From Lepidodermella squamata (Eukaryota > Animalia > Gastrotricha), in contig JBLDXI010000001.1 of assembly GCA_047495785.1 (NCBI GenBank), positions 4,278,001 to 4,342,000 on the forward strand: a stretch of DNA of 64,000 nucleotides, read 5' to 3'. Below the pieces are notes generated by a model. That model was not told the origin of the DNA. It saw nothing but the letters and a program-made list of their open reading frames with translations, and did not search any database. This document shows, piece after piece, positions 1 to 49,221 of the stretch (position 1 is the first letter of the stretch; each line of letters begins with the position of its first letter). The position numbers and the translations under genes are program-made.

Positions 1-3000
1 CATTTCCGTCGTTATGTTGACCTTGTCTTGTAGCGGCGCCTGGCCTGGGGCGAGGCGCGACTGTTGCCGGCTAAAAGCGGCGGCCGACGCTGAACAACTC
101 GGAAGTTGCGTCGACGACATTGCCCGCTTAGCCTCGGGAGAATCCTAGCAAATAAGAAAAATCAAATTTAAACCAGGGCATTTCAGGTTGGATTCGAAGC
201 ATCCAAATTCTGTAAAAATAACTTGAAGAACCAAAAATTTTAAGATAAATCTTAGATAATTTCCCATTGAAATCGGTCTGTTTTAGATTTTACGATTTTC
301 ATCAACTACCCAGTGAAACGAGGATACATCTTTTCTCGATCTGAGCTTAGCGAATCACGGCCAATCTGCTGTGGTGTACCCCGAGGTTTGTCGCTTTTAA
401 TTTTCTACGCTGCAGATGTGCAGCCGAAGGATTCGAGACCCAACGATGGCTCCCTTCGAGTTGAGAAAGGCACATTTGCCGATTAATTTTGAATCGAATA
501 TGTTTCGGGTAATTTTCTAATATGGAGTTATCTGTGAACGCTTATAATAGCCGCAACGGTTCAGAAGATAACTCTTTCCCGTGGATATATATAAATACGA
601 AGTAAAGCTGACCCATTAAAATCGCAAAAAAATTTCAACGCCCTTTTTAGGGTCAGGTTCCTATTTTAATTAGGATACTGGGCTGAAAAATCAAGTCGAA
701 GTTGTTGGTTATTTTATGCTTACCTTGTGAGCAGGCTGCGAGCCTTGAATAGCCAGCGGATTCTTCGGCAGCACGTCGTCGACCCAGCGCAGTTCGTCCT
801 GCGTGAACACGTAGTCGAGCAGTTTGCGAATAATCACCATTATCACGAGCTGGCGAGAAAAATTGGCAAAATTAATGATCGATCTAATTTTTTCATTCGA
901 CAAAAAAGTCCAAACAATTGCACCAATAAAATGTGGGTTTTACTTATACATCAAGCGTCTTGGCGCTCACTTTTCCGAATGTTATTTCAAATTTTTCCGC
1001 ACAAAATCAAACAATAAACGGAAAATCTCAAAATCTGCAAGTTTCTTGCTGTTTTCTTCAAAATAAAAGAGAAAAACTTCATTTCCCCAACAATTCCCTC
1101 ATAGATAATGAAAATTAGCATTTTTCAAAGGTAAATTTCTTATGAAAATTCCAATTTAAACAATTTGAAAAAAACAGTGTGAAATTTTTTCCGATTTTAC
1201 CGAAATTTTAGATTTGTCGATCGAAGCCCAAATTTTGCGCTTCGATAAATCACTAATATTTTATACAATTTCTGTTTAGCTGGAATATTTTCTTGTTTTG
1301 TTGTTTCTTACCATGAGCGGGAAGGCGATCGATATCTCTTTGATTTGCTTGATGATCCACAGGAAAGCGAACGACGCCAGCTGGATGGCGGTGAACAGGT
1401 GCACGCGCCACGTTTTCATGTGCCGCAGGTACGGCGAGTCCGGCTGGTACTTGACCGGCATGAACACGAGCATGATTCGATCGAAAAACTGCGAGCATTT
1501 GAGGGCGGAGACGCCCATGAACAGAAACACGCCGTACAGCACGGGCATGGGTATGTACTCGAGGATGCCCTTCAGCGGCACCGAACAGCCGATTAGCAGG
1601 AAAATGCAGAAGCCGGTCATGCGTTGCTCGCGGATGCCGAGGAATTTCGGCTGTTCGCCTGGTGCTGAGGTTTCGGATTGTTTCCGCAGCGAATTGACGT
1701 GGTTGATTGCGAGAACGGTGGCTGCGACGAAGTAGGGCAGGCCGAAGGTTGCGCAGAACATGATTTGCAGCGTTAGGACGAAAAAGTCCAAGTGATAGCC
1801 ATTGCCTTTCTGAAAATGAAAAAACGGATTTTTTATTGACAAAATATGAGAGTTTCATTGAATATACTTAATATTTCAAGCCTACAAGGTAAAAATAGCC
1901 GAGTTTTCAGCAAACCCCAGCCAAAATTAACCTAATAAAACCCGTCCCAGCCCTCTCATCAGAAAGGCAATTTTCTTCAAGCTGATTATACATTTGAATT
2001 ATTTAGGATTCAAAAGCTCCTAGTTTAGTCAATCGAAATGAACCAAATAACGCTTCTAAAATCTACCTATTAATTCAGCCGAATTTTTTTCATCGAGCAA
2101 GTCTAAAAAGCCAGTATGTTTTACAGTGGGTTTAAATCCTTTATCAAGTAAAAATTTCACAAAGAGAAATTTATTAAAATACGACTTTCGAATTGCGAGA
2201 GAATTTTATACTCAAATGAGAATACGAAAAAGCTTACACTTGCGAGTGAATGTTTCAATCCTTCAACATAAATTTTTTAAATATTTAAGACAAAAAATTT
2301 CACTTTTTCACGATCGAGACGATCAGAGTTGAACTATTTGAGATCTCATAGCCTAATTACTAGCATAGCCTAATACTTAATTAGAAAATTGAATTTTTCA
2401 CGATAATACTGAAATATCTTGCTTTCCAAGGGTGTAGACTACCACCAATTTTGGGGTTTTCACCAACATTCCGGGAAATTCAAATTTCACCACTAATTCC
2501 GAGTTTTCTACCATCAGATTAGAGTTTTCCCCAACGAAACGGAATTTGGGTACTTTTGCCAACAGAATGGAATTCTCTCCAAATCCAGCGGGTATTTTCG
2601 GATTTTTGGGGAGAGAATCCGTTTTGTTGGCAAACGTACCTAAATTAATGGCGGTTACCATTTCGTTGGCGAAAGCTCCAAATTGATGGTAGAAAACCCG
2701 GAATTTATGATGAAATTGGAATTTTCCGGTTTGTCGGTGACAATCCGGAAATTGATAGTTGAAAGCTATTTCCCCTTTTTCCCAATAATAATGACATTAC
2801 TCACCTTTAGTTTATGCTCACGCCTGTTGACAATAACTGCCGTAATTTGCTGATCCATAAACAGCAGAATCGACAGCAAAGTCGCCGGAGCAAGCGCAGC
2901 AAACACCGTCCAAACCGGATTCGCAAACGGCTGGACAACCCAGCCGCGGCCGTCCAGAGTCGGCGTGAATTTCTTCGGCACGCTCAGCTTCGGCGTATCG

Positions 3001-6000
3001 AGCCCGACAATCAAATCGAGCGCAACCATGATCATAATCGAAATGGAAACCGCAAAGTCTGAGACGATTTCGCGGACTCGATTCGGGAAAAACGGCGTGA
3101 ATCGGAAGGCCTTCAGAAACGTCGACAGGCCGAAAGTGCCGGCGAAAATCAGGCAGGAGAAGAAAAATACGTCCGGCTTCGGTTCCTTCAAATCGCAGCC
3201 TGGGCCGAATCTTGCGCATTGTTTGAAATCGCTGCAAATCGAAGCGTTCAGCTCGCGGCAATTTTCGGTTAGCGACACTGTGGAAAGCGTCGAGGGCGCG
3301 ACGGTGAAGCTGGAGGTAGCGGCGCTGAATGGCAGCGGCGATGAGGAATTGCTGATCGGGGCGTAGTCGCACCAGCAGGTTTTGTTGAGGCCGTCCCAAC
3401 CGGCGCTGATCGGATTCAGCTGGTAGATGCCGTAGATGGCGAGGAAAGCTTCGAAGATGAAAATTGTCGAGATTAGAGCGGCGAAGGATTCTTCGGTGAA
3501 ACGCGTGATGACCTGCAATTACACAGGATATAAAAAAATCACAAAAATACAATTTAATTTTCGGAAGTGGAAATTCGGCGTTTCAGCTATCAGAAAATTT
3601 AAATCCTGGTAAAAATGATTTCTTGCTTTTCCAGCAAATTTTTTTCAAATTTACACCTGATGAATTCGGAAGAGGAAATTAAATCTAATTTTTAGATTTT
3701 CGATTGAAATATCGGATTAAAGTATCTAACAAAAAATATGAAAAAGTGTCTAATACATTTTGCTAGCTCACATCAAGAATGTCCCAAGTTGACGCAATTT
3801 CGAAATTTTCAGCTAAAAATTACTGATATATTAAGGAAATGTGCTACAAGATGGCCTATCCTAGAAAATATACAGAATTAATTGCATGCACTCATCTTTC
3901 CACTTTGTGTTCAATCGCGAAATTCCCTCTTAAATACGCGAGTCGAAGTGAAGCCGCCTTCAATTTCAATACTTCGGCAATTCCAGCTCTATTCTCAAAC
4001 AATTATCCTTTCTCGCGTCATTTTTACGGGGCAGCGGGGCTCATTTGAACGTTAATTTTATATTAATTTATTTCATTTCTTTTACACCAGAAGGTAAAAC
4101 CGGGGTAAGATCGCTTAGTAAACAAGGAGCCATTGTTTTTTCATTCATCACCGATGCGAACGGGTATTCGCAGCTGAAATGCCGAGTGACGGCCGAACTG
4201 CGTCAGAAAAAACGACGTCATTCAACGGCAGATGTTTAAATCACAAGATTGAAAGATGGAAAACAAATCTACTCCGTCATCAAGCTATTAAATATCGCCA
4301 TCGCAGCCTAGCGCCTTCATTATTTTGTTTCGATTTTAATACAACTAATTTCACTCAATTCAATGGCCACCACTGGCAATATCGCGATTTTCTTGGTTTT
4401 CGCCGTTGTGCTGGCTAGTGCAGCCGCCCAAATTCCGAAGGGCTACCAACGCGCACCAGGCGGCTGTGACGGATTTATGGGCACTTCAACAGCCAAGAAC
4501 ATAGACGCATGTAACACGCTGTGCAAGCAAAAGGGCTGCCGCGGTTTTCTATTCTCAGGAAGCTCCTGTTCGCTCTACTCGATGTGCAGCAGCTACATTC
4601 TGAACAAACGACAGCTCCCTTTCTTGAGAAAAAGCAGCTAAATTTGAATATTTGAGCGACGCGTAGCTGAGAATTTCACAGAGTGCAGTTGAGGATTTTT
4701 TCGTGAGATGATTGGTGGAAATGGATTTACTGCTAAATAAATCAGTTGCATTTCAGGCAACGCATTGTAACTTTTTATCACGTCTTCGAATTCGTAGCAC
4801 AAATAAGTTTGAAGCTCATACCTATGCCGTGCATGTCATACATGAGCGCGCATTGACGCGATTCCACTATGGCTGGGTCTAAGCCATGGCCGGAATCAGG
4901 CTTCCCAGGTGGTGGCAATTGCAAGGTGTGATTCGTCCATGGAGCGTGCCCACCGCGAGATCGCGAGGTTTTAAACCTGCACGATCTGTCATTGGCTGAA
5001 ATTCTCTGATAGACTACGACACGTGCATTAGCATTAGAGCGACCACATTCCGAGATTATCGTAAAATGAAAGGGTCAAATAATTGATGATTGAGATTTTT
5101 CGGTGGTTTCCGCACATTTCTCGACTATGAATATTCTTTTATCTATATAAATCTATAAGCCATTGCAGCTGATCGCAGCCGCAATATCAAATGACAACGG
5201 CGATATATGATATTTACTGAAAGTATGGCATTATTAAGAACGACTTTATTCATACTTCATTCAATTTTATGACCCATTATGATTTAATCATGCTTCTGAA
5301 GAAGTTAGAACTTGACGAGAACTTGTATGAGCATTTAGGGTCTATTTCACCGCCCTGAAAATAAATGTTTTTGCATTGTGAAATTCCATTTTTATTTAAT
5401 TTTGGGGTCGAAAAACTCGAGCCAAAAGCATCATATTTCCAGGATCTGGTTATTAGAACTTTCGTCCGAAAATTCATTTTTTGCCCGTGTCGCCCACCAC
5501 CCCCGACACGTTCGGAGAGGCTGAAAAAATCGTGTGGCGCCACGTGCATCGCAACTTAATTCCGTTGTCCGTCTCATTTGGGCACCATCCACCCGTAAGA
5601 CAACCCAGAAGCCGCCCAAATCACGGCTTAAAAATTCGTCAGAAGTGCGTCAGAAGTGCATCGGAGCGCATCGACAGAGAAATTGGAGGGTGCCTAATAC
5701 CGGGTGGTGCCCGTTTGGCAAGAATTAAGACGCGAAAAAACAGCTTGGCAGAATTTTAACAAGTGTGTCGATCGTATTTCACTATTTTTTATATAATTGT
5801 TAAGGCGGTGAAATAGACCCAAAGACTCTACTTCTGACCCTCCTTTAGCCGAATCATCCAGAAAATTAGGGTTTTCAAAATGTTTCCAAAATTGCTCTAC
5901 TTCGTTTGTAACGAACTTTGCTTATAGCGAACATTCTTATGATGTGGCACCGTAGTGGTTCGTTATAACGAAAGTGCTTTGTATTAGATTATTGTATTAA

Positions 6001-9000
6001 ACCGAAAATTACCGAACCAGTTACCGTCGGGGTTATCAGGGTAAAATCGTTGATGAAGGATGGAAGATTCCCCCAGTGGGCTGAATTTATTTAAAAATGT
6101 CGCGAAATACACAATGGTTCTGCAACTTGTGGGACACGCTGTAGTTATTATCACAACTCCGCTTGTGGCTGAGGTGCAGCCACTGCAGGAATAGCGTTAG
6201 AATTTTGTTGCCAAGGAAGCTATTTCATGCACTAATTATCATTATAAACAATTCTTGATTTGTAGAAAAAATAGCGAGGGATTGGAATTATCGAGGGAGC
6301 ACTGTATGAGAGCACTTGCCTTCGGAATACATTGCTCTCGTCAAATTTATGATACATTTCAAATGATTCAAGAGGTGCTAGGCATGCAGCCAACACGCAT
6401 GAATATTGTAAGTGCAATAACTCTCATAAGAAAAGTTGACACGACTTCTTCCGATATTTATTTGATTTATTGAGAAGCGAACCCTTCACCAAAATCATCT
6501 TGCGAATAACTCTTCAATCCTCAACTCTCCGCTGCGCATCGTCGTGGCAACCAAATATTCCAATTCAGTTGCTCTTTCTCAAGAAATCGGTGCCTCGCCA
6601 GTTCCGAATGTCCATACCGCACTTCGAGTAGAGTGAACAGAAGACGGCCGAGAACCGGAAACCTTGGCAGCTTTTTTTGCTGCACAACGTGTTACACGCG
6701 TCCAAAGTCGTGGATGCTGAAATGCCGAGGAGTCCTTCACAGCCGCCGACGCGTTCGTAGCCTTTAGGAATTTCGGTGGCTAGTGTACTAGCCAGCATAA
6801 CAGCGAAAGCCAAGAAAATCGCGATATTGCCAGTGGTTGCCATTTAATTGAGTTATGTCAATTCAACTTGAATTTTAAAATTGAAACGAAATAATGAAGG
6901 AGCTAAGCTGCGATGGCGATATATAAAAGCTTATGGGACACGCATTTTCTCGACTTTCTGACGTATGATTTGAACATCTGCCGTGAAATGACGTCAATTC
7001 TTGTATTTTGGCCCGCACTCAACATGACAGCTGAAGACACCCGGACACATCGTAAATTATGGATGAAATAAACAATGGTCTTTTCAACACTGGGCGCATT
7101 TTTACCCGGCGTACAAAATAAAACGAATATCAAATTGATGTTCATATGACGGAGCCACCGGGCATAAAATTGACAGAGAAAGGGCTCGAGTCGATTACCC
7201 CGGGTTAATACAGGACAAACCGATGAGTGTTGAAAAGACCATTGTTTTTTCATTCGTCATTTAACATGTGACCGGGTCTCTCTTCAGCCGTAATGTTAGT
7301 GAGGGCCAAAATTCAAGAAATTACGTCATTTCACGGCAGATGTTCAAATCATACGACGAGAAAAATGCGTGTTCCATAAGCTTTTAAATATCGCCATTAC
7401 AGCTTGGCTAGTTCATTGTTTCATTTCAATTGTAAATTTCAGTTCAAGTTACTTCACTCAATTCAATGGCAACCACTGGCAATATCGCGATTTTCTTGGC
7501 TTTCGCTGTTGTGCTGGCTACTGTAGAAGCCCAACTTGTGAAGCGTGTCGATGAAGTACAAGGCGGCTGTGAAGGAGTCCAAACCTTTCCAGGAAAGACC
7601 TTGCGCACTTGTGTCAATTTATGCGATCAAAAACGCTGCCAAGCTTTCCGCTTGAAAGCCGGCGCCTGTTCGCTCTACTCCAGGTGCAGCAAGTTCATTC
7701 CGAACAAGTCAGGTGAGCCTTTCTTCAGAGCCATATTCTGAGCTAAATTGGAATATTTGGGTGCAATGGCGATGCGCAGCGGAGTGTTCCATATCAGTGA
7801 GAAGTTGACGATTGGTTCACAAGATGATTGTGGAAAATGGGTTTTCTGCTAAATAAATCAGTTGCACTTCAGGCCAAAAAGTGTTTTGTTACTTAGGTAT
7901 ATCACCTTTACTTATCCATTGCTCATTCATGTTGATCAGTGGTGCAATATAGGCCTCATTTTAATCTTGAAAATCACGAATGATAGTGAAGCTGCTCTCT
8001 AACGATCCTTAATTCATAGTGCTAAATTTTGTAAATTATGAAAATCGAAAAATCAGAAATAACAGGCAAATGAAAATAAACAATGGTCTTTTCAACACCA
8101 GTGTAAAAAATGAAATGAATGCCTATCAAATTAATGTTCGAACGACGGAGCTACACAGCGTAAAAATGACGGAGAAAAGGCTTGAGTAAATTCGATTAAT
8201 GTATTATGCATCCGATCCCATATCAGTACCAAACTCATGAACAGATGTGAACAGCTATTTGACAAAAATCGTATTTCCACTCTAATCTATCTTTCATTGA
8301 TGTACAAGTTCGATTAATTCTTTACTATCAATCAATGTATTCTACCGTCTGTTTCCATCAACAAAACCGAGGTTGGCAACAAATCTTGATTTGTAAAATT
8401 ATTATTTCAACAATCGGCTTTGGTAATTTTGGTAATTTTCAAGGTTAAGGGGATTGAGGAAATATTTTTTTACCTGAACAAGAGCGCTGAGATCGAAAGC
8501 TACCAACAGCATCATAATAGCCGCCGTCCACATGCCGATCCAAAATCGGAAGGTCAAATAATTCAGCTCATTATCAACAGAAAACGAGTACAAAATCTTC
8601 TCAAAAACCAAAACCGGCCCAGTCGATCCGATGATAGTCAACGGCTGCCCAGCGAATAAATGATAAGTCGTGCCGCAAACCGCGCCGGTTAAAATCGACT
8701 CAAACGCCGCCATATTGTTGCCGGTCGCCATGCCCAACAGCCCGCCAAACGTCACAATAGGCGACAGACACGCGAAGAACAGAAAAATAGTCGACGCCAA
8801 ACACTGAATATGCATCGCATCTTTGATGTCCGACAAATAAAACGGCGTTTTCCGCTTGATATCCGCGATTAAACCGCCGAAAATGCGCCCGGTCCGCTGC
8901 AGGGTCGGGTCCAACTCGTGCTCACCGCCCTCTTCTTCGTCGTTTTCGAGCTGCTTCTTCAAAATCAGCTCATTCAACGCAGCATTCGACTGATTCTCCG

Positions 9001-12000
9001 GCAGTTTCGGGTCGCCGCTTGACTCACCCTGCGAATTTGCGGTCATGACTAACCCGCCCAATTTCGCACTCGAGGCGACTCGTTCCATCGTCGCTGTATC
9101 CCCCTGCTCCTCGGCGATTTGATTCAACGCGTTCAGTTTTCGCTCCTCCTGCGTTGGCACGGATTTAGGCGGCTGGATGCGGATAGTCGGGTCCCACTCG
9201 CCCGGCGGTAGGATCGTGACTTCGTCCAGGAACTCGTCCAGCCCAGCTAGAACGTCCGCCCTATCCCGCGCGCGATAGGCCACGTCGCGGAAAATGTCGT
9301 CCGACATGATGGTCGCCATAGCGCGGCCGATTTCGTGGAAGTCTTTCGCGCGAACTGACGGGCCGAGCATGACGAAGACGAAGCGCGTTGGCACGGCGAC
9401 TTCGGTTAAATCGTCGAGGATGATGGTGTTAGACAAGCGGATGAACGCTGACACGGCGTGGTTCAAATACTCAACCGCGCCGACCATTGTCGAGGACGCC
9501 TCAGTTCCAGGGGCGAGTTTCTTCGCAAAATGCTCGTTCGGCTAAATGAATGAAAAAAAATTCAATAAAATTTTCAAAAATCAAACATCAAAAATTAAAT
9601 GACCAGGTGATGAAACTAAAATTGAGAAGCAGTTTCTCGAAAAACGTGAAAATAATTTTTGGAATATTTGCAATCAATGATCATATAAGTGAAACAAAAG
9701 TGAGTGATAAGCCCGTCTACGAGATATAGCTGTTTATTTAGGTACCCGAACGTGGACGGAATTCGTACTGCCAGCACATGGGCCTTTCGTATATAATCTG
9801 TTTTGGGACTTTGGAAGGACATCGAAGCATAATTAGAACATGATTGATAAAGCACACAGATTTCGTGGAACCACAAAAGCTAAAAAAAATGGTCGAAGCA
9901 CGCGACTGGGTAGATTTTCTTGAAATTTTGAAAAATCTTCGAAAAAAGCTAATCGAACACGGGAATTTAGGATTTTCTTTTTCTCAGGAGAAAATTTACT
10001 CATATGCATGCTTTGACCATTTTTTGAGGAGTTGATAGTTCCACTAAGCATTTGAAATGGACAATAGGCCTAGTCTCTCACAATTTTCTCGAAACTTTCA
10101 AATTTCTCAACAAATTTCAATTTTCAACTTTGAAATGAAAAATTTAGGAAATTGAAATAAGACAAAAAATTACCTTGTGACATGAAGTGCTTTCAGCCGC
10201 GCCAAGCTGGACTAGCGAGGGCACTGATGGCACAGACAGACCGCCAGCACCCCCAAAACTGCTCGCAACTTGCGACGACGGATTCAGGCCTGATGAAATT
10301 TGCGCCTTATCCGCATTGTCTTCTGTAAAGGAAAAAATACAAAATTAGACTGAAATTTTTATCACTCTGGCAACCACTCAAAATACAACAGAATGAATAA
10401 TACAAACCGGCAATTGATAAAATTTGAAATTCGTGAAAACTGAATAATTCTAAAAAGCGGCCTTGTTGCTTGATAGCGATTATACTGAAATAACTATAAG
10501 CGCTAAGCAAAATTTAATCGGAGCTTCACGCGCTTAAAATTCGTTTCTCTCATACTGGCATTATATTCGAACCTGGAATGTTCATGCAAACGGCTATTGA
10601 ATGTGATCGGTCGCGATCACTGCCCGACACGCTCGATCGGATACCTTTTTATACGCATTTTATACGATGAAATGTAGATAACAGCGATTGCTTCAGGAAA
10701 GGATAATATCTTTTTTGAAGTTTATTTTGAAATTAAATTAGAGTCAAAGACCACAGCTGCTCTGAATTCAGGAAATATCGAGTTTTATCTTCGAAAAAGC
10801 TCTTCGATGAAGACTTGCGAATAGATGGATATTGGACTCTCGCGCGAAAATTGCAAACGAAAGTTGCAAATTTACAAATCTGATATTGTCTGGTTTAAAT
10901 CCTTTCCGATAATCAAATTCATTCGAATTATAAACGCCAAATCTCGATTAAACAATTTTGGTTAGTTTCGGCATCAACTTCAAGGCTTGGTCCACGTTTT
11001 ACGTCAGATTAAAAATTGACCTAAACATGTTTCTCGATCATATGGACACTTTGGGTTTGGTCGGCGTTGGAAGTGACATTGAATGACCCAAAGCAAAACA
11101 AAAGAACACCTATCTACAAGAACTATCAGTGCATTCAGCTAACCATTAAGAACGAAACCATGACATGTAACGAGAAAAGTCAATCTTCATATATAAAAAA
11201 CTCCACGAAAATGCATTATTCATCTACTGACTTTTCTAAGGTGCAGTTGAAATTTCAGTGTTGAATTAGATTTTCTAGTAATTTTCTAAAATATGCAAGC
11301 TTAACGCCTCACCTTGAAGGACAGGCAGAGCTCCGCCTGAGTTAGTTGAATGCGTAGCTATTTCACAACAATGCAGTTAAAAACCCAGAATTTTCCGGAA
11401 AAATAGCTAATGACGCATGCAAGCTTGAAATCGAGGTTAGAGATGAAAAAATATCAAATTAAGCCAGAGTTTTTCGAACTCAGCAAACAATTAGTTATAT
11501 TCAATTTTTTGAACTTTTCAATTCAAATTTGAATTTTCAAAATTACCTTCATCCATGCGTCGAGACGAAAATTTCTTGCCAATCTCCGACAATCCGCGTT
11601 TAATCGGCCCCTGGGCGTGTTCGTGCTGGTGGATGTGTTTAGCCATCAGCGTATTGATAACTTCTTCCCTGAGGGTCGCCTCCAGCTGATTGTGGCCGAT
11701 GAGAGCGTCGACTAGCAGGCCGACTAGTTCTGGGTAGTTGCGTGGTTCGATGTCGAGCAGCACGACGCCGAATGAAAGACACTGCCGTAGTTCGAACAGG
11801 GCGTGCAAAGCGAGCGTGGCGACAAATGGCTTCGACCACCGCCCGCCGCCTTCCTCCACATCTTCTTCGAATCGCACCTTTAACAGAAAAACGACATTTT
11901 AATAGAGCTATTATTAATGTTTCATTTTTTTCTTCGACTTATGATCACAGGGGCCTTGCTTTATTTAGCTAATAGTTCCTTGCAAAATCAAATCTTCAAC

Positions 12001-19771: not shown

Positions 19772-19795
19772 CAACCCCTAAACCTAACCCTAACC
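19772..19795. repeat. Degenerate (CCCTAA)n telomere-like tract
   Basis: caacccctaaacctaaccctaacc. Confidence 0.4.
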
Positions 19796-23400: not shown

Positions 23401-23818
23401 CCGCATTTATCTAACAGTTTTCGAAGCTCGATAAAAGCTCTCATCGGAATTGAAGCCACGTAGGGTTTCGACCATCGACCTCCGCCAGCTTCGACGTCTT
23501 CTTCGAATCTAACCCAACGAGCCGATTCATACCAAACTTCGTCATGCAGTTCTTGAAGCTCACAGAATAGGCGGCAAGTTTCTGGATTTTTAGGCGCCTC
23601 AAATTCCATGAGTTCATCAAGTCGAGCTTCTTCATCTGTCGAAGATTCATTAGAGAAAATTAATCTCGAAATGTGGAAACTTACGGATATCCACTGCATC
23701 TTCATGCTCATCATGAGGCATGTCTATAGTTGAATTATGAGTAGTGGAAAATTAATGAATAAGATTCGTGATGAGAAGATTTACCATCGTCCCGCCTTGC
23801 CGTGTCGCTGCTCATCAT
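20446..23818 (-). CDS. SLC4: SLC4 bicarbonate transporter, copy 2 (compact)
   Basis: Exons 23818-23785, 23723-23685, 23635-23198, 23124-20786, 20734-20603, 20547-20446. Core SLC4 motifs present; ends ...DTNV*. Confidence 0.93.
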
Positions 23819-26656: not shown

Positions 26657-26707
26657 AATAAAAATAGCCGCCGTACTCATGTTTATTCATGAACTATATT
26701 CAGGGCA

Positions 26708-29700: not shown

Positions 29701-30186
29701 CCCAAGGTGCTCGTTCAACTCAAAAAGAGCCCGCATAGGTAAGGCAGCTACGAACGGCTTCGACCAACGCCCTCCGCCTGCTTCGACATCCTCCTCAAAA
29801 CGGACCCATCTCGCAGATTCGTACCAAACCCCATCGATGAGCTCTTCCAATTCACAGAATAACCGGCATGATTCTTCGTTGCTCGTGCCGTCTTCGTTGA
29901 AGAGAAGTTCCGCCAATCTTTCCGCTCCGGGATCGTCAGCGAGCGCAAATGAGCCGGAGTAAGGGAGACCTACATGGTTACTAGGGTTAGTAGCCTCCCC
30001 TTCCACTATCACTGTGACTCCATGATTTATAATTTTTAATTGGTGGTCTAATATTCAAGTTTAATGATAACACAACGGTTAATGAATGAGTTGTAGCATA
30101 CCTTCTGTTTTCTCAGCTCGATTTGGATTCTTGCGATCGACCATCGGGCTGGATGTCGCTGAGTCGTCGATGAAAAACGATGCCAT
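26708..30186 (-). CDS. SLC4: SLC4 bicarbonate transporter, copy 3 (compact)
   Basis: Exons 30186-30102, 30047-29475, 29426-27607, 27554-27057, 26996-26865, 26812-26708. Starts MASFFIDD; core motifs present. Confidence 0.93.
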
Positions 30187-34100: not shown

Positions 34101-34745
34101 GAGTTTACTCTCAGCCAAGCTCTCGGCAATTAGAGCGGTTAGTTCAGCAAAAGATTGGACCTCTACATCAAGCATAACAGCTCCGTGATTGAAGTGATGG
34201 CGGAGTTCGAAGAGAGCTGACATGGGAATTGAGGCGACGAATGGCTTGGACCATCTATCGCCCCCAATTTCGACATCCTCCTCAAAACGGACCCATCGGG
34301 CTGACTCGTACCAGACACCATCGTGTAGTTCTTCCAGCTCGCAAAACAGCTTACATAACTCTTCTTGAGGACCATCAGGGAACAAAAGCTCAGCTAGACG
34401 TTCCTTATCGGCCTCAACTGGGGGTCAAGTTCAGGGATGAGTTTAATGACGAAAAGTTCAATCTTACTCGTATTCACGCTGTTGGTAGATCCCAGACCAG
34501 CATCGCTCCCACCTCGCCGCTGCCTCCTCAAGTTTCCCTCTGGAGTTGGAGGGGCCAGTAGGTTGCGGGAGGCTAGAAATTCTTTATAAGGAAACTCAAG
34601 GAAAGCTCAAAGCCTCACATCTTGTATCTCCGCATTCTTCGGTGAGAATAGCTTGTACCCGATTCGGGAGAGGGCCAGTAGCCTTCCGCTCGTTCGGAGG
34701 ACTATGATTCGGCGAGTCCGCATCATCGATAAAAAAATTTGCCAT
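31149..34745 (-). CDS. SLC4: SLC4 bicarbonate transporter, copy 4 (compact)
   Basis: Exons 34745-34619, 34572-34468, 34417-33962, 33903-32369, 32321-32049, 31995-31498, 31442-31314, 31259-31149. Starts MANFFIDD; Lys-rich tail. Confidence 0.93.
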
Positions 34746-38400: not shown

Positions 38401-38689
38401 TACGAACGGTTTCGACCATCGATCGCCGCCAACTTCGACATCCTCTTCGAATCGAACCCATCGAGCTGATTCGTACCAAGAGCCGTCGGTCAGTTCTTCG
38501 AGTTCGCAGAACAACCGGCATGTCTCTTCAACAGGGGTGTCAGGGAATAGCAGTTCCGCTAAGCGATCGACCCCTCCCTCCTCAGTTTTCTCACCAGGAG
38601 CTTCCTCTGACAACGTAAATAATGTTGACATTGCGGATGAAAAAAATCAACTGCGATGTGTTACCTATCGTAAAGCTGACCGGTTCCAT
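35467..38689 (-). CDS. SLC4: SLC4 bicarbonate transporter, copy 5 (compact)
   Basis: Exons 38689-38665, 38606-36679, 36623-36351, 36295-35798, 35746-35621, 35568-35467. Confidence 0.93.
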
Positions 38690-40527: not shown

Positions 40528-43500
40528 TCAAGCTGTTACTTGGTCCTTGTTCAATGGTTCAGCCTCCTTGATTCTTTGTTTGATTTCCCGAGACGATGGA
40601 GCATTTTCCTGTTAAATCAATGTCATAGAAAAATCCATGAGTAGAATCAAATGTTACCTCAGGTTTCGGAGATTTCCTGGGAACAGCTAAAACATTCTTA
40701 GGCAGCGGATCATCGATAAATCTCAACTCTTCTTGGGTAAAGACGTATTCCAACAGCTTACGAACAGCTATCATCACAACAAGCTTTAAAGAGGGAAATT
40801 TGAAAATTTTAGCAACGCAAAACTACTGTATTATCCTACCATTAAAATGAAGAGGATTGATATAACTTTAATCTCTTTGATCACCCAAAGTGCGACAAAA
40901 GCTGAAAGCTGGATGAGGGTGAAGAGATGGACTCGCCAGGTTTTCATATGCCGCAAGTAAGGAACATCAGGTTGATACTTCACGGGCATCAAGAACAGCT
41001 GGACTCTTTGATAGAACTGCGAGGTCTGTAAAGCAGTTAGGCCCATGTAAAGAAAAACTCCGTACAAAACTGGCATCGGAATGTATTTCAAAATCGCCCT
41101 CAGCGGAATTGAGCAACCTATTAAGGCGAAAACAACGAAGCCGGTGACCCTTTGCTCGATGAGGCCGAGAAATTGCGGTTGTTCACCAGGAGCCGAGGTT
41201 TTGGACTGCCTCTTCAGGGAAGTCACGTGACTGATTGTTGGAACAGTAGCGGCTATGAGGTATGGCAGTCCGAAAGTTGCGCAAAGTGCCACTTGGATTG
41301 TAACGACTAGCATATCCAAATGATATCCCTTTCCCTTCTAAATTCACTAAAATTATGCCATGAATCCGAAAAATGTAGTGGTATGCGCACCTTGAGCTTG
41401 TGCTCTTTACGATTGACGATCACAGCAGGAATTTGTTGGTCCATAAATAATAACACAGCCAACAGCATAGCGGGTATAATCGCTGCGAAAATGACCCAAA
41501 TTGGGCAGTTGAATGGTTGAACGATCCATCCGCGATCTGGCTTTGTTGGCGCAAAATGGTCTGGAACGATCAGTTTCGGGGTACGAAGACCCATGAAAAA
41601 GTCGATCAGCACCATGGCAAGAATGGATAGTGAAACAGCGAAATCGCTGATTGTGTTTCTTACCTTAAAAAGAGAAAGTGATAATTAGAAAATGTTACTC
41701 CTCATTCGTAAAAGATGTTGAGTTTTGAGTTCAAACATCTTAGAATGGAAATTTCCTTATTTTCAACTCGAAGAACGCTTGTAAAAGATGGGATTAGTTT
41801 GAACAAACTAATTAGAAACTAGGTCTTACCATAACAGGGAAGAATCGAGTTTCTCGGAAATCAGTCAATTTCAAGGCGAGCCAGCACGTTCCGGCAAAAA
41901 TCATGCACGAAAAGAAGAAAACTTCAGGTACAGGCTGCGTGAGACCGCATCCAGGGCCAAGCTTTGCGCAGCTAGCGTTAACTTCGCATTGATCAACTGT
42001 CAAATTACTGCAATTGACATTGGTAAAATTGATTGGATCTGTCCAATTTTTCGGAGAGCAACTGCAGCTGAAATCTGTTTTCAAAGCTTCAGGAGACGCG
42101 ATGCCATTGATTTCGTAAATCTCGTAGATGGCTTGAAACGCTTCGACAATGAAAATGATAGAAACAAGCGTTGCAAAGCACTCTTCCGTGAATCTTGTGA
42201 TCAACGCAACAAGCGCGCTCAAATCGAACGCGACAACCAGTAGGAAGATGAACGCGGTCCAAATGCCGATCCAGAAGCGCGTTGGTAGGTATTCAAGCTC
42301 GTGATCACTCGTGAACCCGTAGAGAATTTTCTCGAAAATCAAAACAGGCCCAGTTGTTGCTAAGATCGTAATTGGCTGCCCAGCGAACAAATTATAAGTT
42401 GTGCCGCAAATTCCGCCGGAAAGAATCGACTCGAAAGCTGCCATGTTTTTGTTTGTCGCCATGCTTAGCAGACCACCGAATGTGACAATAGGGGAAAGAC
42501 AGGCGAAAAAGAGGTAAAAAATCGAAGCAATACACTGAAAATTGAGCGCGTCCTTGAAATCGGACAAATACCAGGGAGCTTATCGTTTCAAATCTTCCAC
42601 TAGACCACCGAAAAGCCGCCCAGTTCTTTGGAGAGCTGGATCTAATTGAACAGCAGATTCGTCTTGCTCGTAATTTTCCCGCCTTTTCAACAGCTCTTCC
42701 GCATATATATTGGGCTGAGGCAGGCTGTTTGAACTTTGCGGGGCCTTCAAGGATCTTGTTGTCGCTATTCTCTGAATTAGGCCAACTTTCGATCCTCCAA
42801 AGACGGAACTTGACTTGGCGGCTCAATGCGAATCTTCGGATCCCATTCACTAGGAGGTAGTGCGATGATTTTGTCCAGGAATTCGTCCAAACCCGCGAGA
42901 ATGTCGGCCCTTGTTGAGCTGCGGTAGACAACCTCGCGGAATATATCATCGGCCATCGCGGTCTGCATAGCTCGCCCGATCTCGCGCAGGTCTTTCGCAA
43001 CCGCTTTCGGGCCAAGAATCACACAGATGAATCTCGTGGGAACTGATACTTCAGCACATTCTTTCAGGGTGATGCGAGTCGCCAGACGGATGAAAGCTAG
43101 GACAGGGGCTGTTGCGAAATCAACCCCTCCGACTAGGGCGGTTGAAGCCTCCGAATCGGGCGAGAGTTTCTTGGCGAATCGAGCGTTTTGCCGGATTTTT
43201 CCATCACCTTGAAGTTGGGGGCTATCCGACGGATTCTCACTCTCTACATTGCGACTCGATAGCTTCTTACCAATTTCAGACAAACCTCGAGTGAACTTTT
43301 CGAAGTGATGAATGTGGCGAAGTTTCAAAGTTTCAACAACGCTGTCACGAAACTCCTGGCTGATCAAACCTTTCTCGATCAAAGCGTCAGCAATTGATGA
43401 TGTTAGCTGGTTGAAATCATGGGCTCTTCCATTTAGCTCTAAAGCTCCGTGTGACAACAAAGAGCGAAGTTCGAATAGCGATCGCATGGAGAGGGCTGCG

Positions 43501-43995
43501 ACAAATGGTTTCGACCATCGTCCGCCGCCACTTTCGACACATTCCTCAAAGCGAACCCATCGAGCTGTTTGTTGCCAAAGATTATCTGTCAGCTCTTGCA
43601 ACTCACAGAAAAGCTGGAACGGTTGGTCAGTCGGGTTGGCGGGGAAAATGATTGCTTCGAGACGATCAATGTCCACACCATCTTCCACGTCCGGACCTTG
43701 GACAGGCGGTTCTGAAATTAAATGAGAAAAATATTCGGCTTTGATGACGGCGGTACTATGGGCCTAAGTCAATTGTGCTACGCGGACGCGCTACACGCAT
43801 ATAGCACGCAATTTATTGAGAGGAACTTCTTAAATAACAAGATTCCTTGTTAGAATGCCTATAAATTTGTATGTTTATGCTTAAATTTAAATGAGAATAT
43901 AATTATGACTTCGATGATGAAGTATCGTCTGGTGGACAATAGAAAAGGTATAAGGTAAAGTGTGTCATACCTATTGAAAATCTCGCCATTTCCAT
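40528..43995 (-). pseudogene. SLC4: SLC4 copy 6, disrupted (frameshift plus nonsense codon)
   Basis: Exons 43995-43971, 43711-41830, 41663-41391, 41337-40840, 40783-40658, 40608-40528. An apparent 1-nt loss near 42781 gives RKLA* and homology resumes in another frame (LIQRIATTRS). A second in-frame TAA lies at 42580-42582 (LKR*APWY vs VKRKAPWF in copy 5). Confidence 0.8.
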
Positions 43996-44641: not shown

Positions 44642-47600
44642 CTAGACCTGATTCGCCACTGCAGAATTGCTGAGCTGTTTCTTATCGGCCTCACTGCCGG
44701 AACTCCTCTTCCTGAGGTTGGAAGCCGAAGCTGTTTTACTCTTAGAAACCTGAATGGGAATAATACGAATGACAAAAATTCAGGAAAATTGTTTTGGTAT
44801 TACAAACCTCAGGTTTGTTAGCTTCTTCCTTTGAATCCGGCGAAGCAACTGCAAGGGGATTCTTTGGCAGCACATCATCAACCCAACGAAGCTCTTCTTG
44901 TGTGAAAACAAAATCTAGCACCTTACGTAGAGCTACCATGATCACAAGCTGAAATGAAAATAAACATCGTAAAACAACTTAGTACTACAGGAAGTTCAAA
45001 CCATGAGTATAAAAAGGATAGAAATCGACTTGATCTGTTTTATAACCCAAAGGCCCATGAAAGCCACCAATTGGATAACGGTGAACATGTGAACTCGCCA
45101 AGTCTTCATATGCCTCAGATAAGGAGCATCTGGTTGGTACTTGACTGGCATGAAGAACAGCAGGCATCTCTGGTAGAACTGCGATGTCTGTAGAGCAGCT
45201 AGACCCATGTAAAGGAACACTCCGTACAAAACAGGCATAGGGATGAACTTAAGCACTCCTCTCAACGGGATGGCGCATCCAATAAGGACGAAAACCATGA
45301 AGCCAGTGACTCGCTGTTCAATGAGACCAAGGAATTTTGGCTGTTCGCCCGGGGCTGATGTTTCGGACTGTTTTCTCAGAGAATTAACGTGGGTTATCGA
45401 TAGCACAGTGGCTGCGACAAAATATGGCAGTCCAAAGAAGGCACAGACAACTACATGAACCACCAGCACCAGTAAATCGAGATGATAGCCCTTTCCTTTC
45501 ACCAATTTATGCTCACGACGGTTGACAATAACCGCCGTAATTTGCTGATCCATGAACAGCAGCACTGCGAGAAGAAATGCTGGGAAAGGAGCGGCTAAAA
45601 TAGTCCATACAGGATTGGCAAATGGTTGGACAATCCAACCGCGATCCGGTAGGGTAGGTCCGAAGTCCTTGGGGACAGTCAATTTCGGAGTTGGCAAATC
45701 CACGAAAAAGTCAATCGTCACCATCGTAAAAATTGAAATCGATACAGCAAAGTCGCTGATGATATTTCGAACCTTATTTGGGAAGAACGGGGTTGTTCTA
45801 AAGTCCTTCAAGGAGAAGGACATGAAGCAAGTCCCGACGAAGATCAAGCAGGAGAAGAAAAATACGTCAGGCTTTGGTTCTAGGGCCCCGCATCCCTCGC
45901 CAGCCTTCACACAATCCGGGGTGGGACAGTTAGAGGAGTTAAAAGCCCAGCAATTCAAGCTTGAGGTGAAATTAAGAGGTTCAGGGTTAGTTTCACACCA
46001 ACATGAGTAATTCTTCGCAAGATTCCAACCGCTGCTTATCGGGTTAGCCTTGTAGATGCCGTAAATTGCTGTGAAAGCTTCGAAGATGAAAATTACTGAA
46101 ATCAGGGTCGCGAAACATTCCTCGGTAAATCTGGTGATGAGCTGAACGAGGGCACTTAGATCGAACATGACAATTAGGAGCATGTAAGCAGCAGTCCAAA
46201 CGCCGATCCAAAAACGGAGGCATAGATAGTTGAAATCTCTACCACTTGCGAAGTTGAAGACAATCTTCTCGAAAAGCAGAACTGGCCCAGTTGACCCAAT
46301 AATTGTTACAGGCTGGCCTGCGAACAGATGATAAGTCGTACCGCAAATCGCTCCGGTAAGGATGGATTCAAAAGCAGCCATATTCTGCCCAGTTGCCTCG
46401 CCCAGAAGGCCTCCAAAAGTGACAATAGGAGCCAAACAAGCGAAGAATAAGTATATGATAGACGCGACACATTGAACGCTTAGAGCATCTGTGAAGTCTG
46501 ATAGATACCATGGTGCTTTTCGGCGAATATCAGCCACGAGACCTCCAAAAATTCGACCAGTTCTTTGAAGGGTTGGATCAACTCCATGGCCACATTCTGC
46601 TTCAGGCTCTGGCTCAGGTTCTGGAGGTTTTGGGGTTACAGAACCTCCCTGGTCCACCCCGCTAGTTTCACCAACATCCGAAGTACTCGGGACCTTCATG
46701 ACTAAGCCTTCTTGCAAATGTCCTGAGGAAGAGGTCGCCTCGAGACCGCTATTTTCGCCTAATTCTTCCGCAATTTGGTTCAGAGCGTTCATCCTCCTTT
46801 CATCCTGAGTTGGGACAGATTTCGGAGGTTGAATTCTGATACTAGGGTCCCATTCCCCAGGTGGGAGAATTGTGACTTCGTCAAGAAACTCATCCAATCC
46901 TGCCAATAAATCCTGCCGATCCCTAGCGCGATAGGCCACGTCCCGGAAGATATCATCTGACATGACTGTAGCCATTGATCGACCGATTTCCAAGAAATCT
47001 TTCGAACGGGCCGATGGTCCTAATAGCACGAAGACAAATCTTGTCGGGATACTAACCTCAGTTAAATCGTCAAGGATTAGGTCTTTTGACAGTCGAACAA
47101 AAGCGCAGACAACTTTGCTCAGGAAATCGACCCCGCCTACCAGGGTAGCTGAAGCTTGGGATCCAGGTGGCAGCTTCTTAGCGAAATGCTCGTTTTGCTT
47201 ATGCGGCTCCTCTGGAACAGGCTGAGGTTTAGGAACTGGAATCTGCGCTAGACCTGCAATTCCTCCAACAATCGCAGCAGATGCGCCGAGTCCTGTCGCC
47301 AATTGCGCAGACATCATCCCAGGTGAATTGTCCTCTGCAGAAAATGAAATAAAATTTGTGGATTTTTCATATTAAGAGAAACTTACGAGATGAAAGCTTT
47401 TTGCCGATTTCGTTCAGTCCGCGTTTAATTACACTTTGAGCATGTTCGTGCTGATGGATGTGCTTCAAATGCATAGTCGCGATGAATTCGTCCCTTTGGC
47501 CGACTTCCAGCAAGTTATTCCCAACCATTGCATCCGCAATGAGGCCGAAAAGCTCTCCGAAGTGACGAGGTTCCATGTCGAAGAGAATTACTCCGTTATT

Positions 47601-49221
47601 GAGGTTTGAGCGCAGCTCAAATAGAGCGTGAAGGGCTAGGGTTGCTACAAAGGGTTTCGACCATCGCCCACCGCCTTCTTCGACATCCTCCTCGAAACGA
47701 ACCCAGCGGGCCTTTTCGTGCCATTCTCCGTCTTGCAGTAGCTGGAGTTCGCAGAATAGAGCGTGAGACACTTCCTCGCCATCTTCTCCACTTATCAACT
47801 CCCGGAGTCGATCAGAGGAAACTGGCTCTGAATTTCAAAACAAGATAAACCATAAAATTCGAATAGTAGCTTTCTCAATAGTTAATTTCACACACCATTT
47901 TCATCCATAGTTATTTGCATTCAGGAGTTAGGAGGGGAAACGTTGAACGTTAAATCTGACAACACTTCTCGGAAAATTATGCTGGGGGGTAGTATATAAG
48001 ACCAGCCTTCCAAAATCGATTTCGACTCAGAATAATTTCTTGAGTAAACGATGGAAAATCAATCAAAAACCAATTTTCTCCAGATTAAAAATGCTAATTT
48101 TATGCAGCATATCATAAAGTCATAGCCCAATTTTGATCTTTTAGTCAGCTTTTGTTAGTCATTTGAGCACTATTCGAGGTTAAGTGACTTTGGGGTTAGT
48201 AAAATTCACAATAAAATCACACGTATTTCTCGGTACCTTGCCCGAGTGAACCTGCAGAAGATTCCCTATCAATGCCTAACAATTAATGTAAGATAGCAAC
48301 GTATAAACTAAGAAAGTCAACTCACTAGTAGAAAGATCCGGCACTCGTATCGAATTCTCACTCGGCGGCTTAGTCAACAACGGCTTCTCTTCTAAAGATT
48401 AGAGTGGTCAACAAAAAAATCAAACCATGCAATTCGAACTACAACAAGGGATTTTTCATACCTCCGGATGGCGTTGTAATCCACTCAACTTCCGGTGTTG
48501 GAACCTCCGCCCCTTCCACCATCTGGCTGCGCCTTCGTTGCCGGTTCCGGCGCTTCGCAGTCGGCATTTGAATGACCGTTGTCGCATCCTCGCGATGGCC
48601 TGTTGCCAAAATAGGAGATGGAGGGCATGAAGTTGTTGAAATCAAGGTACTCGACTCGCTAGTGCGGCGCCGCAATGTGCTAGGGGTGCCGCGTAAGCTA
48701 TCCGGCTCATCCTCGCCCGAGATGGTGCTATCAATGTGGCGCAGGCGCACCCGCTTGTTACGCAATAGGTACTCGGCCATTAACTACTACTACGCACTCG
48801 AAACTGCAGGCCGATGGCACAATGCTAGTCAACGTCGCTAATCGATTTCATCTCGTGCCGCCTGCTGATATTATTACGTCCCCCCATTATTGTTTGACAG
48901 CGGGCCAGGACCAATATATTTATTTAAGCGCGATAAAAAATTATTACTATTATTTTGCCTGATGGGACACGAAGTCATATACTGGCGGATATACGCGTGG
49001 TCGAAAAAGTATAAATAAAAACCGGGGAACAATGGCGGGGCGGAAATCGCGCTAGACCTTATCCGAAATATTAAATCGCTGCACAATATAATAATAATTT
49101 TTTGCGACAAACTTTGAATGTCCTCAGGGCCGACCAATAGATTGGCGTAGTTTTGCTTGTAGTCGACAATTACCGCCTCGTGAGGCGCAGCTGATGATTC
49201 TTCAGTGGGCTGGGCTGACAT
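44642..49221 (-). CDS. SLC4: SLC4 bicarbonate transporter, copy 7 (full N-terminus)
   Basis: Exons 49221-49113, 48599(or ATG 48780)-48462, 48391-48326, 48275-48237, 47827-47387, 47334-45002, 44948-44808, 44749-44642. Exon 1 VDYKQNYA matches copy 1 VDYKQFYA. Confidence 0.92.

What the first reader, a model, noticed from the sequence alone, without database searches (positions are those of the whole stretch)
1..49221. Tandem array of seven SLC4 bicarbonate transporters
Seen: seven same-strand, head-to-tail, clearly diverged paralogs, six of them intact. All have the Asp of DQQI and lack the AE1-type Arg in TM10. Known: these are marks of Na+-coupled SLC4s, and invertebrates usually carry few such genes; SLC4 duplication has been tied to calcification in stony corals (SLC4-gamma). 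Inference: a lineage-specific bicarbonate-handling expansion, for example for biomineralisation, carbon supply to symbionts or acid/base secretion.
Basis: partly seen in the sequence, partly recalled or inferred. Interest (0 to 1): 0.8.

Follow-up and report, generated by a model that had tools for sequence, protein, structure and literature searches.

The report
Tandem array of sodium-bicarbonate transporter genes
A small freshwater invertebrate, very probably the gastrotrich Lepidodermella squamata, carries seven neighbouring copies of a sodium-coupled bicarbonate transporter gene; six have intact core reading frames, at least three are transcribed, and one is recently broken, which makes this a real but ordinary gene-family expansion, probably used for acid-base and salt balance.

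Summary
Seven SLC4 genes lie head to tail on the minus strand between about 0.7 and 48.8 kb. One unrelated prolyl-hydroxylase-like gene sits between copies B and C on the other strand.

- **Intactness:** six copies have stop-free core reading frames of 949-976 codons. Copy F (40.5-43.7 kb) has a 1-nt frameshift, an in-frame stop and changed ion-site residues.
- **Transporter type:** the six intact copies keep the Na+/carbonate site residues of rat NDCBE. They have Asp where anion exchangers have Glu, and Leu or Gln where AE1 has Arg730.
- **Phylogeny:** the seven copies plus four genes from unidentified metagenome contigs form one clade (support 100/99) inside the Na+-coupled branch. One of those contigs also carries a tandem pair. 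Monophyly of the seven alone is rejected (AU p = 1e-10), so the oldest splits predate this species. Copies B-F form a younger block in which chromosomal neighbours are sisters.
- **Expression:** RNA contigs from two runs skip the predicted introns of D and E, and one of these runs holds all sampled words of G's main exon.
- **Function:** nothing supports biomineralisation or symbiont carbon supply. Acid-base and ion regulation in a freshwater animal is the likeliest role, untested.

This is a new member of a known kind, of modest interest.

The parts
709..16747 (-). Copy A, the most conserved copy. Core exons: 15345-15232, 11877-11545, 9541-8474, 3512-2805, 1809-1312, 849-724. Putative first exon starts at the ATG at 16747. 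The terminal exon was not identified.
   Evidence: tblastn and junction search. Stop-free 949-codon core. N-terminal exon with a basic cluster like other Na+-coupled SLC4s. Shortest branch in the tree, 0.11. Introns of 0.46-5 kb, unlike the other copies.
20446..23714 (-). Copy B, the most divergent intact copy. Core exons: 23633-23198, 23145-20786, 20734-20603. Predicted short terminal exon ends near 20449. The 5' end is unresolved.
   Evidence: Pfam. Stop-free 976-codon core. Gln at the AE1 Arg730-equivalent position. 34 private changes at columns invariant in the other copies. Sister to C with 100/99 support.
26708..30186 (-). Copy C. Core exons: 29937-29475, 29426-27607, 27554-27057, 26996-26859. 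Putative first exon starts with an ATG at 30186 (MASFFIDD...).
   Evidence: Gln at position 849, as in B.
31149..34745 (-). Copy D. Core exons: 34415-33958, 33887-32369, 32321-32049, 31995-31498, 31442-31313, then a terminal exon ending near 31149. Putative first exon starts with an ATG at 34745 (MANFFIDD...).
   Evidence: Models. RNA contigs of run X1 skip 31442|31498, 31995|32049 and 34417|34468; run X3 skips the first of these. The loose end at 31313 continues into the predicted terminal exon.
35467..38631 (-). Copy E. Exons: 38631-36679, 36623-36351, 36295-35798, 35746-35621, and 35567 to a stop near 35467. The 3' UTR runs to about 35250.
   Evidence: Models. RNA contigs of X1 skip all four predicted introns (35567|35620, 35746|35798, 36295|36351, 36621|36677); X3 skips two of them.
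40528..43697 (-). Copy F, a disabled copy. Pieces: 43697-42790, 42771-42601, 42597-41830, 41663-41391, 41337-40840, 40783-40655.
   Evidence: Frameshift and stop. Ion-site changes G536A, S537T, T804P, V844I, L849P. Sister to E with 100/100 support, on a branch three times longer.
42772..42790 (-). 1-nt frameshift in copy F, in the variable linker before the membrane domain.
   Evidence: Three-frame translation. DNA alignment of E against F.
42580..42582 (-). In-frame stop codon (TAA) in copy F, where copy E has AAA (Lys) in the conserved KRK-APW motif.
44642..48780 (-). Copy G. Core exons: 47813-47387, 47334-45002, 44948-44820. Predicted terminal exon ends near 44645. Putative first exon starts with an ATG at 48780.
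   Evidence: Pfam and models. Runs X1 and X3 hold 100% and 27% of the sampled words of 44996-47317, and one search showed both runs to be RNA. N-terminal basic cluster as in A.
37705..38164 (-). Tract of copy E shared with copy F (F 42816-43275), encoding part of the cytoplasmic domain.
   Evidence: The two copies are about 93% identical at DNA level here, against about 70% elsewhere. All 32 differences fall at third codon positions, with no amino-acid change.

Best explanation
This is a tandem array of Na+-coupled bicarbonate/carbonate transporter genes. They belong to the SLC4 family, on the branch that holds NBCn1, NDCBE and NCBE.

**Origin (shown).** The array grew by repeated local duplication in the lineage of this animal, very probably the freshwater gastrotrich Lepidodermella squamata.
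- Copies A and G, at the two ends, are the oldest and most conserved.
- The middle block B-F is a younger expansion in which chromosomal neighbours are sisters, as unequal crossing-over produces.
- Copy F received a stretch of E-like sequence. It stayed under purifying selection afterwards and was disabled only recently.

**Gene state (shown).** The six intact copies keep the residues that bind Na+ and carbonate in the solved NDCBE structure.

**Function (inferred).**
- The six intact copies most likely move Na+ together with HCO3-/CO3(2-) across membranes.
- They differ mainly in their N- and C-terminal tails, the cytoplasmic linker and the large outer loop. The likeliest division of labour is therefore by tissue, membrane side or regulation.
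- I infer roles in pH control and transepithelial ion and base transport, in excretory tubules, gut or epidermis.
For: - **Family:** Pfam HCO3_cotransp plus Band_3_cyto.
- **Subfamily:** the best solved relatives are NBCn1, NCBE and NBCe1, ahead of the anion exchangers.
- **Ion site:** the six intact copies have D800, T804, T847, T538, G539, K970 and R879 in NDCBE numbering, and no copy has Arg at 849.
- **Constraint:** synonymous sites are saturated while pN is 0.20-0.31, which means long-term purifying selection.
- **Trees:** an 11-gene clade has 100/99 support. Inside it the branching is ((E,F),(D,(B,C))), which matches the chromosomal order B-C-D-E-F.
- **Relative:** it also has clustered copies. 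L003 carries two same-strand genes, with the 3' end of a convergent third at its edge.
- **Expression:** intron-skipping RNA contigs cover D and E in two runs, and G's words are present in the same runs.
- **E/F tract:** 32 synonymous and 0 non-synonymous differences.
- **Analogy:** planarian slc4a genes are expressed in protonephridia, and knock-down acidifies the intercellular milieu (PMC4500094).
Against: - No transport assay exists. Na+ dependence, Cl- dependence and electrogenicity cannot be read from sequence.
- Expression of A, B, C and F was not tested, and no tissue data exist.
- The whole clade lacks a TM5 lysine (K612 in NDCBE). Mutating it to Cys impaired rat NDCBE, so transport properties may differ from the mammalian proteins.
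- The 5' ends of A, B and G and the 3' end of A are unverified, so 'intact' applies to the core only.
- Species identity rests on earlier agents' notes plus circumstantial agreement with the published assembly.
- The F lesions were seen only in this assembly.
Confidence: 0.8

Rival explanations
1. Some copies have changed their coupling mode. Candidates are B and C, which have Gln at the AE1 Arg730-equivalent position, or the whole clade, which lacks the TM5 lysine. Possible new modes are Na+-independent exchange, K+-driven exchange or electrogenic transport. The array would then hold functionally different transporters, not regulatory variants.
For: - B and C share L849Q in the central ion site.
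- The 11-gene clade has Ala, Gly or Ser where nearly all other SLC4s in the alignment have Lys612.
- K612C impaired rat NDCBE, and the paper names central-site residues among the determinants of Na+ dependence.
- B has the longest branch and 34 private changes at otherwise invariant columns.
Against: - The residues that coordinate Na+ directly (D800, T804, T847) are intact in all six copies.
- L849C did not affect rat NDCBE, so position 849 tolerates change.
- No functional data exist.
Confidence: 0.12
2. The expansion serves biomineralisation or carbon supply to symbionts, as the first reader suggested by analogy with coral SLC4-gamma.
For: In stony corals a tandem SLC4 duplicate was recruited for skeleton formation (PMC10268325).
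Against: - From my own knowledge, not checked here, the probable source animal has cuticular scales, not calcified ones, and no known photosymbionts.
- Nothing in the window links the array to mineralisation genes. The only interposed gene is a prolyl-hydroxylase-like gene.
Confidence: 0.04
3. Most of the array is redundant or decaying. Only one or two copies matter and the rest are drifting towards the state of copy F.
For: - F is already broken.
- A metagenomic relative (L006g) also carries T804P and G536T.
- The word depth of D's contigs is far lower than E's in run X1, although the tool warns against ranking genes by depth.
Against: - Six copies have kept roughly 950-codon open frames although their synonymous sites are saturated. 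That cannot happen without selection.
- The ion-site residues are intact in all six.
- D and E are correctly spliced in two runs.
Confidence: 0.04

Closest known systems
Vertebrate electroneutral Na+-coupled SLC4s: NBCn1 (SLC4A7), NDCBE (SLC4A8), NCBE/NBCn2 (SLC4A10)
   Same: - Two-domain build: a Band 3 cytoplasmic domain plus a 14-helix membrane domain.
- These are the best sequence matches among solved structures (782 and 779 bits).
- Identical Na+ and carbonate site residues, with no insertions or deletions between TM8 and TM13.
- An N-terminal basic cluster in copies A and G.
   Different: - Only about 50-56% identity.
- The TM5 lysine (K612) is replaced in every copy.
- The C-terminal tails are short and unrelated to each other.
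- The copies are not one-to-one orthologues of any vertebrate paralogue; the gastrotrich clade branches among spiralian sequences.
Squid Na+-driven Cl-/HCO3- exchanger (Doryteuthis pealeii, UniProt Q8I8G6) and related mollusc and insect NDAE1-type genes
   Same: These are the closest named invertebrate proteins, at 51-56% identity over 95% or more of the main exon. They lie in the same Na+-coupled clade and have the same ion-site residues.
   Different: The array described here has seven adjacent paralogues. I did not count gene copies in those species. Intron content here is very reduced and differs between copies.
Coral SLC4-beta/SLC4-gamma tandem duplicate
   Same: An SLC4 gene duplicated in tandem within one animal lineage, followed by specialisation (PMC10268325).
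   Different: The coral case has two genes, not seven, and has a demonstrated role in calcification. Here there is no link to mineralisation, and the copies belong to a different SLC4 lineage.
Planarian slc4a genes (slc4a-6, slc4a-7)
   Same: Flatworms have been suggested as close relatives of gastrotrichs (abstract of PMC6468455). The planarian paper uses slc4a names up to -7. Two are expressed in protonephridial segments, and knock-down of one acidifies the intercellular milieu (PMC4500094). This is the best functional analogy.
   Different: Neither genomic arrangement nor orthology to the array was examined here. The flatworm sequences in my tree (cestode) fall outside the 11-gene clade.

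Membership tests
SLC4 bicarbonate transporter family | HCO3_cotransp membrane domain (PF00955) preceded by the Band 3 cytoplasmic domain (PF07565) | tested here: met
   E = 3e-209 and 2.5e-210 over the full profile for B and G, with partial hits for the A and E exons. tblastn finds all seven copies.
Na+-coupled SLC4 branch (NCBT) | Asp (not Glu) at the TM8 position equal to NDCBE D800 / NBCe1 D754 / AE1 E681 | tested here: met
   Asp in all seven copies and Glu in the two anion-exchanger controls. Residue mapping follows PMC8478935.
Na+-coupled SLC4 branch (NCBT) | Non-basic residue at the TM10 position equal to AE1 Arg730 (NDCBE L849, NBCe1 I803) | tested here: met
   Leu in A, D, E and G; Gln in B and C; Pro in F; Arg in the anion-exchanger controls.
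Na+-coupled SLC4 branch (NCBT) | Na+-coordinating Thr804 and Thr847, and carbonate-coordinating Thr538 and Gly539 | tested here: met
   all are present in the six intact copies. Copy F has T804P.
Na+-coupled SLC4 branch (NCBT) | Placement inside the Na+-coupled clade when rooted on anion exchangers | tested here: met
   the split between the AE and Na+-coupled clades has 100/100 support, and the window copies fall on the Na+-coupled side.
Na+-coupled SLC4 branch (NCBT) | Na+-dependent HCO3-/CO3(2-) transport measured experimentally | not testable with these tools
   This needs heterologous expression with pH and current recording.
NDCBE-type (Na+-driven Cl-/HCO3- exchange) versus NBCn-type or electrogenic NBCe-type | Cl- dependence and stoichiometry | not testable with these tools
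   I know of no sequence motif that separates these modes (my own knowledge). The copies score slightly higher against NBCn1 and NCBE than against NBCe1 and do not group with the NBCe-type sequences.
Lineage-specific tandem expansion | The copies are each other's closest relatives compared with all other sampled taxa | tested here: met
   An 11-gene clade (seven window copies plus four genes from unidentified metagenome contigs) has 100/99 support against representatives of 150 clusters and named mollusc, arthropod, flatworm, nematode, echinoderm and vertebrate sequences.
Lineage-specific tandem expansion | All seven copies arose within this species alone (strict monophyly of the seven) | tested here: not met
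   The AU test rejects it, p = 1e-10. Copy A pairs with metagenome gene L009p at 99/95 support.

The most novel reading that the evidence does not exclude
The array may be a natural series of coupling variants. The whole clade has lost a TM5 lysine that is nearly universal in SLC4s and is needed for rat NDCBE activity. Copies B and C also carry a polar Gln at the central-site position where anion exchangers have the anion-binding Arg. If these changes alter ion coupling (cation choice, Cl- dependence or stoichiometry), the six paralogues would be a ready-made comparative set for the still-open question of what sets transport mode in SLC4 proteins. They might also mark an adaptation of a mostly marine phylum to fresh water.
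Probability: 0.12. Interest if true: 0.6.

Novelty: new member of a known kind. Interest (0 to 1): 0.35.

Why it matters
- **First described SLC4 genes for the phylum, as far as I could find.** The published genome paper for the probable source species does not mention SLC4 or bicarbonate.
- **A clean example of stepwise tandem duplication.** Chromosomal order mirrors the tree. Intron content differs between copies. One stretch of sequence was exchanged between neighbours. One copy died only recently.
- **A testable ecological lead.** The probable host is a freshwater member of a mostly marine phylum. The expansion could therefore relate to ion and acid-base regulation after the move to fresh water.
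- **A small natural data set for transporter biologists.** The substitutions at K612 and L849 could inform work on SLC4 coupling.

None of this overturns current knowledge.

Tried and rejected
- **Close orthologues by word search.** Searching with G's main exon gave nothing above 56% identity. The exhaustive representative search gave nothing above 60%. The source genome's own proteins appear to be absent from both libraries.
- **Exon-sized query.** Searching with the exon-sized C-terminal ORF of E did find three closer metagenome proteins, which led to the related contigs.
- **A 32-nt intron to bridge F's frameshift.** I rejected this. It is far shorter than any other intron here (47 nt or more), and it would not remove the stop codon.
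- **dN/dS between paralogues.** This was uninformative as a ratio because synonymous sites are saturated, so I report only pN and pS. My first run had a 1-nt error at the start of F, corrected.
- **Shared first exons.** A motif search found the MAxFFIDD first exon only in C and D. tblastx of G's upstream region against the other copies' upstream regions, and blastx against reference N-termini, found nothing.
- **Pfam on flanking and interposed ORFs.** Scans of 6903-7253, 20081-20398, 50495-50848 and 54015-54437 gave nothing.
- **Joined spliced models.** Joined models were built only inside local scripts for alignments and trees. No database search with a joined model was done.
Full report
**What is in the sequence**

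Long minus-strand ORFs between 1 and 48 kb match the bicarbonate-transporter membrane domain and the Band 3 cytoplasmic domain. For the two longest ORFs the Pfam E-values are about 1e-209. tblastn with the window's own ORFs and with the squid Na+-driven Cl-/HCO3- exchanger finds seven copies, all on the minus strand:

| Copy | Span in the window |
|---|---|
| A | about 0.7-16.7 kb |
| B | 20.4-23.7 kb |
| C | 26.7-30.2 kb |
| D | 31.1-34.7 kb |
| E | 35.5-38.6 kb |
| F | 40.5-43.7 kb |
| G | 44.6-48.8 kb |

A prolyl-4-hydroxylase-like gene on the plus strand (24,795-26,656) lies between B and C. No SLC4 remnant was found elsewhere in the window.

**Gene models**

A junction search for GT..AG introns that preserve frame and alignment gave clean models. 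Six copies have stop-free cores of 949-976 codons. In copies B-G the introns are mostly 47-73 nt; F has one of 166 nt. Copy A has introns of 0.46-5 kb. Intron content differs between copies:

- Two intron positions occur only in A.
- One occurs only in D, E and F.
- One is missing in B and G.

Each copy appears to end with a short, unrelated C-terminal exon after a conserved phase-0 intron. RNA confirmed this for D and E only. N-terminal exons also differ:

- A and G have an upstream ATG exon with a basic cluster, as in other Na+-coupled SLC4s.
- C and D start with MAxFFIDD.
- E starts inside its main exon.

The 5' ends of A, B and G and the 3' end of A are unverified.

**Copy F**

F has four kinds of damage:

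- It changes frame once in the linker, near 42,772-42,790.
- It has TAA at 42,582-42,580 where E has AAA, inside a motif invariant in the other copies.
- DQQIT has become DQQIP, which removes a Na+-coordinating Thr.
- It carries G536A, S537T, V844I and L849P.

Even so, F is not an old wreck. Its branch is only three times longer than that of its sister E.

Over a 460-nt tract (E 37,705-38,164, F 42,816-43,275) the two copies are about 93% identical at DNA level, against about 70% elsewhere. They differ at 32 positions, every one a third codon position, with no amino-acid change. That pattern means sequence was exchanged between the neighbours, or with a similar donor. Both versions then stayed under purifying selection. 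So F was disabled recently.

The probable source assembly is built from HiFi reads, so I take the lesions as real. I could not check them in independent reads.

**Which kind of SLC4**

Among solved structures, G's main exon scores highest against NBCn1 (782 bits) and NCBE (779 bits). NBCe1 follows at 707 bits, AE2 at 537 and SLC4A11 at 207.

The NDCBE structure paper gives the binding residues (PMC8478935):

- Na+ is bound by Asp800, Thr804 and Thr847.
- Carbonate is bound by Thr538 and Gly539.
- Lys970 lies at the entry site.
- AE1 Arg730 corresponds to NDCBE Leu849.

The window proteins align to this numbering without indels from TM1 to TM5 and from TM8 to TM13. All six intact copies carry every one of these residues. 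Position 849 is Leu in A, D, E and G and Gln in B and C. Anion-exchanger controls in the same alignment have Glu800 and Arg849.

One clade-wide difference stands out. Lys612 in TM5 is Lys in nearly all other sequences in the alignment, and the K612C mutant of rat NDCBE was impaired. In all seven copies, and in the three metagenomic relatives that cover this position, it is Ala, Gly or Ser.

**Phylogeny**

No protein in either large library is more than 60% identical to G. That is about the same as the identity between copies (55-74%), so a tree was needed.

An exon-sized query and cluster look-ups led to ENA metagenome contigs from an unidentified related animal:

- L003 has two same-strand SLC4 genes with the same exon pattern as D, E and F. 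It also has the 3' end of a convergent third gene at its edge, which appears to be the L006 gene.
- L009 has a partial gene.

I built three trees:

| Tree | Rows |
|---|---|
| FastTree | 130 |
| IQ-TREE, site-heterogeneous model, quick search | 66 |
| IQ-TREE, careful search with bootstraps | 34 |

All three place the window copies in one clade inside the Na+-coupled branch, with anion exchangers as outgroup. In the careful tree:

- The seven window copies plus the four metagenome genes form a clade at 100/99.
- A pairs with L009p at 99/95.
- The remaining nine form a clade at 100/98. It holds G, the three L003/L006 genes (99/99) and ((E,F),(D,(B,C))) at 100/100.

An AU test rejects monophyly of the seven window copies alone (p = 1e-10).

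So the A-versus-rest split, and probably the G split, predate the divergence from the relative. B-F is a younger block, and the relative expanded independently. Within B-F, sister genes are chromosomal neighbours, as sequential unequal crossing-over predicts.

Cluster names identify the outside clades. They include molluscs, arthropods, a brachiopod, a cestode, a seisonid rotifer, nematodes, echinoderms, vertebrate NBCn1/NDCBE/NBCe2/AE4, and AE2 and band 3.

**Selection**

Synonymous differences are saturated (pS about 0.8) for every pair outside the E/F tract. Non-synonymous differences are 0.20-0.31. Keeping roughly 950 codons open at that depth requires purifying selection on all six copies. 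G and E have the fewest private changes at otherwise invariant columns (7 and 10), A has 13 and B the most (34). By branch length in the careful tree, A (0.11) and E (0.10) are the shortest and B (0.44) the longest.

**Expression**

One read-laying run of 6 kb was allowed, and I used it on 31,301-37,300, which covers D and most of E.

- Contigs of run X1 (2015) skip three predicted introns of D and all four of E; contigs of run X3 (2014) skip one of D and two of E. All joints have GT..AG ends on the minus strand, so both runs are RNA.
- Run X2 (2024) covers the stretch in one unspliced piece, so it is DNA and may be the source.
- X1 and X3 also hold 100% and 27% of the sampled words of G's main exon.

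D, E and G are therefore transcribed. A, B, C and F were not tested.

**Source organism**

Earlier agents of this scan concluded that the genome is very probably Lepidodermella squamata. Three things agree with that:

- The published assembly is 122 Mb in 157 contigs and was built from HiFi reads.
- The same study also sequenced C. elegans. This could explain why the second organism listed for X2's study holds none of the words; that identification is my inference.

The paper does not mention SLC4 or bicarbonate.

**Interpretation**

Shown:
- The array, its intactness and the ion-site residues.
- The clade structure.
- Transcription and correct splicing of D and E, and presence of G in the RNA runs.

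Inferred:
- The six proteins carry Na+ with HCO3-/CO3(2-).
- Because they differ mainly in their tails, linker and outer loop, they have divided roles by tissue, membrane side or regulation.
- They serve acid-base and ion balance.

The best analogy is the planarian. There, slc4a genes mark protonephridial segments, and knock-down of one acidifies the intercellular milieu (PMC4500094).

The coral SLC4-gamma case shows that tandem SLC4 duplicates can be recruited for calcification (PMC10268325). Nothing here points that way.

**Verdict**

The finding is real and carefully observed. This is a new member of a known kind and of modest interest. There is a small chance that the K612 and L849 variants make it a useful natural series for studying SLC4 coupling.

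Public searches used single-exon ORFs by reference. Joined models were used only in local scripts, and no joined-model search was run. F was joined only with X at its breaks.

Noticed in passing
window 24795-26656 (+): A prolyl-4-hydroxylase-like gene (TPR_P4H peptide-binding domain plus a 2OG-Fe(II) oxygenase domain) lies inside the array between copies B and C, on the opposite strand. Its two ORFs overlap at 25820-25859, so it has either a small intron or a frameshift.
   Followed up: partly
window 4130-7874 and 12388-14325 (introns of copy A): Repeated 0.5-0.65 kb segments, direct and inverted, 69-75% identical, lie inside copy A's long introns. One plus-strand ORF (13943-14266) matches the PAN domain (E = 3.7e-5). 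This agrees with another first-stage note about intron-nested PAN mini-proteins. Copy A is the only copy with long introns.
   Followed up: partly
window 60657-62474 (+): A 605-aa ORF with a MULE transposase domain, probably a Mutator-like transposon or a domesticated copy. An acidic ORF on the opposite strand overlaps it at 60530-60955.
   Followed up: no
L003 1-9333 and L006 4356-10134 (ENA metagenome contigs): An unidentified related animal in ENA metagenome assemblies has its own SLC4 cluster: two same-strand genes plus a convergent third, next to trypsin-like genes. The third gene (L006g) carries T804P and G536T, like copy F, yet is called as one long ORF.
   Followed up: partly
window 47814-49221 (-): Two ATG-initiated minus-strand ORFs lie upstream of copy G (48439-48780 and 48874-49221). 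The first has a basic cluster like the N-terminal exon of copy A and is probably G's first coding exon. The second has no detectable similarity to anything tested.
   Followed up: partly
all seven copies, TM5 (NDCBE position 612): A lysine that is almost universal in both anion exchangers and Na+-coupled SLC4s is Ala, Gly or Ser in all seven window copies and in the three metagenomic relatives that cover this position. The Cys mutant of this residue impaired rat NDCBE.
   Followed up: partly
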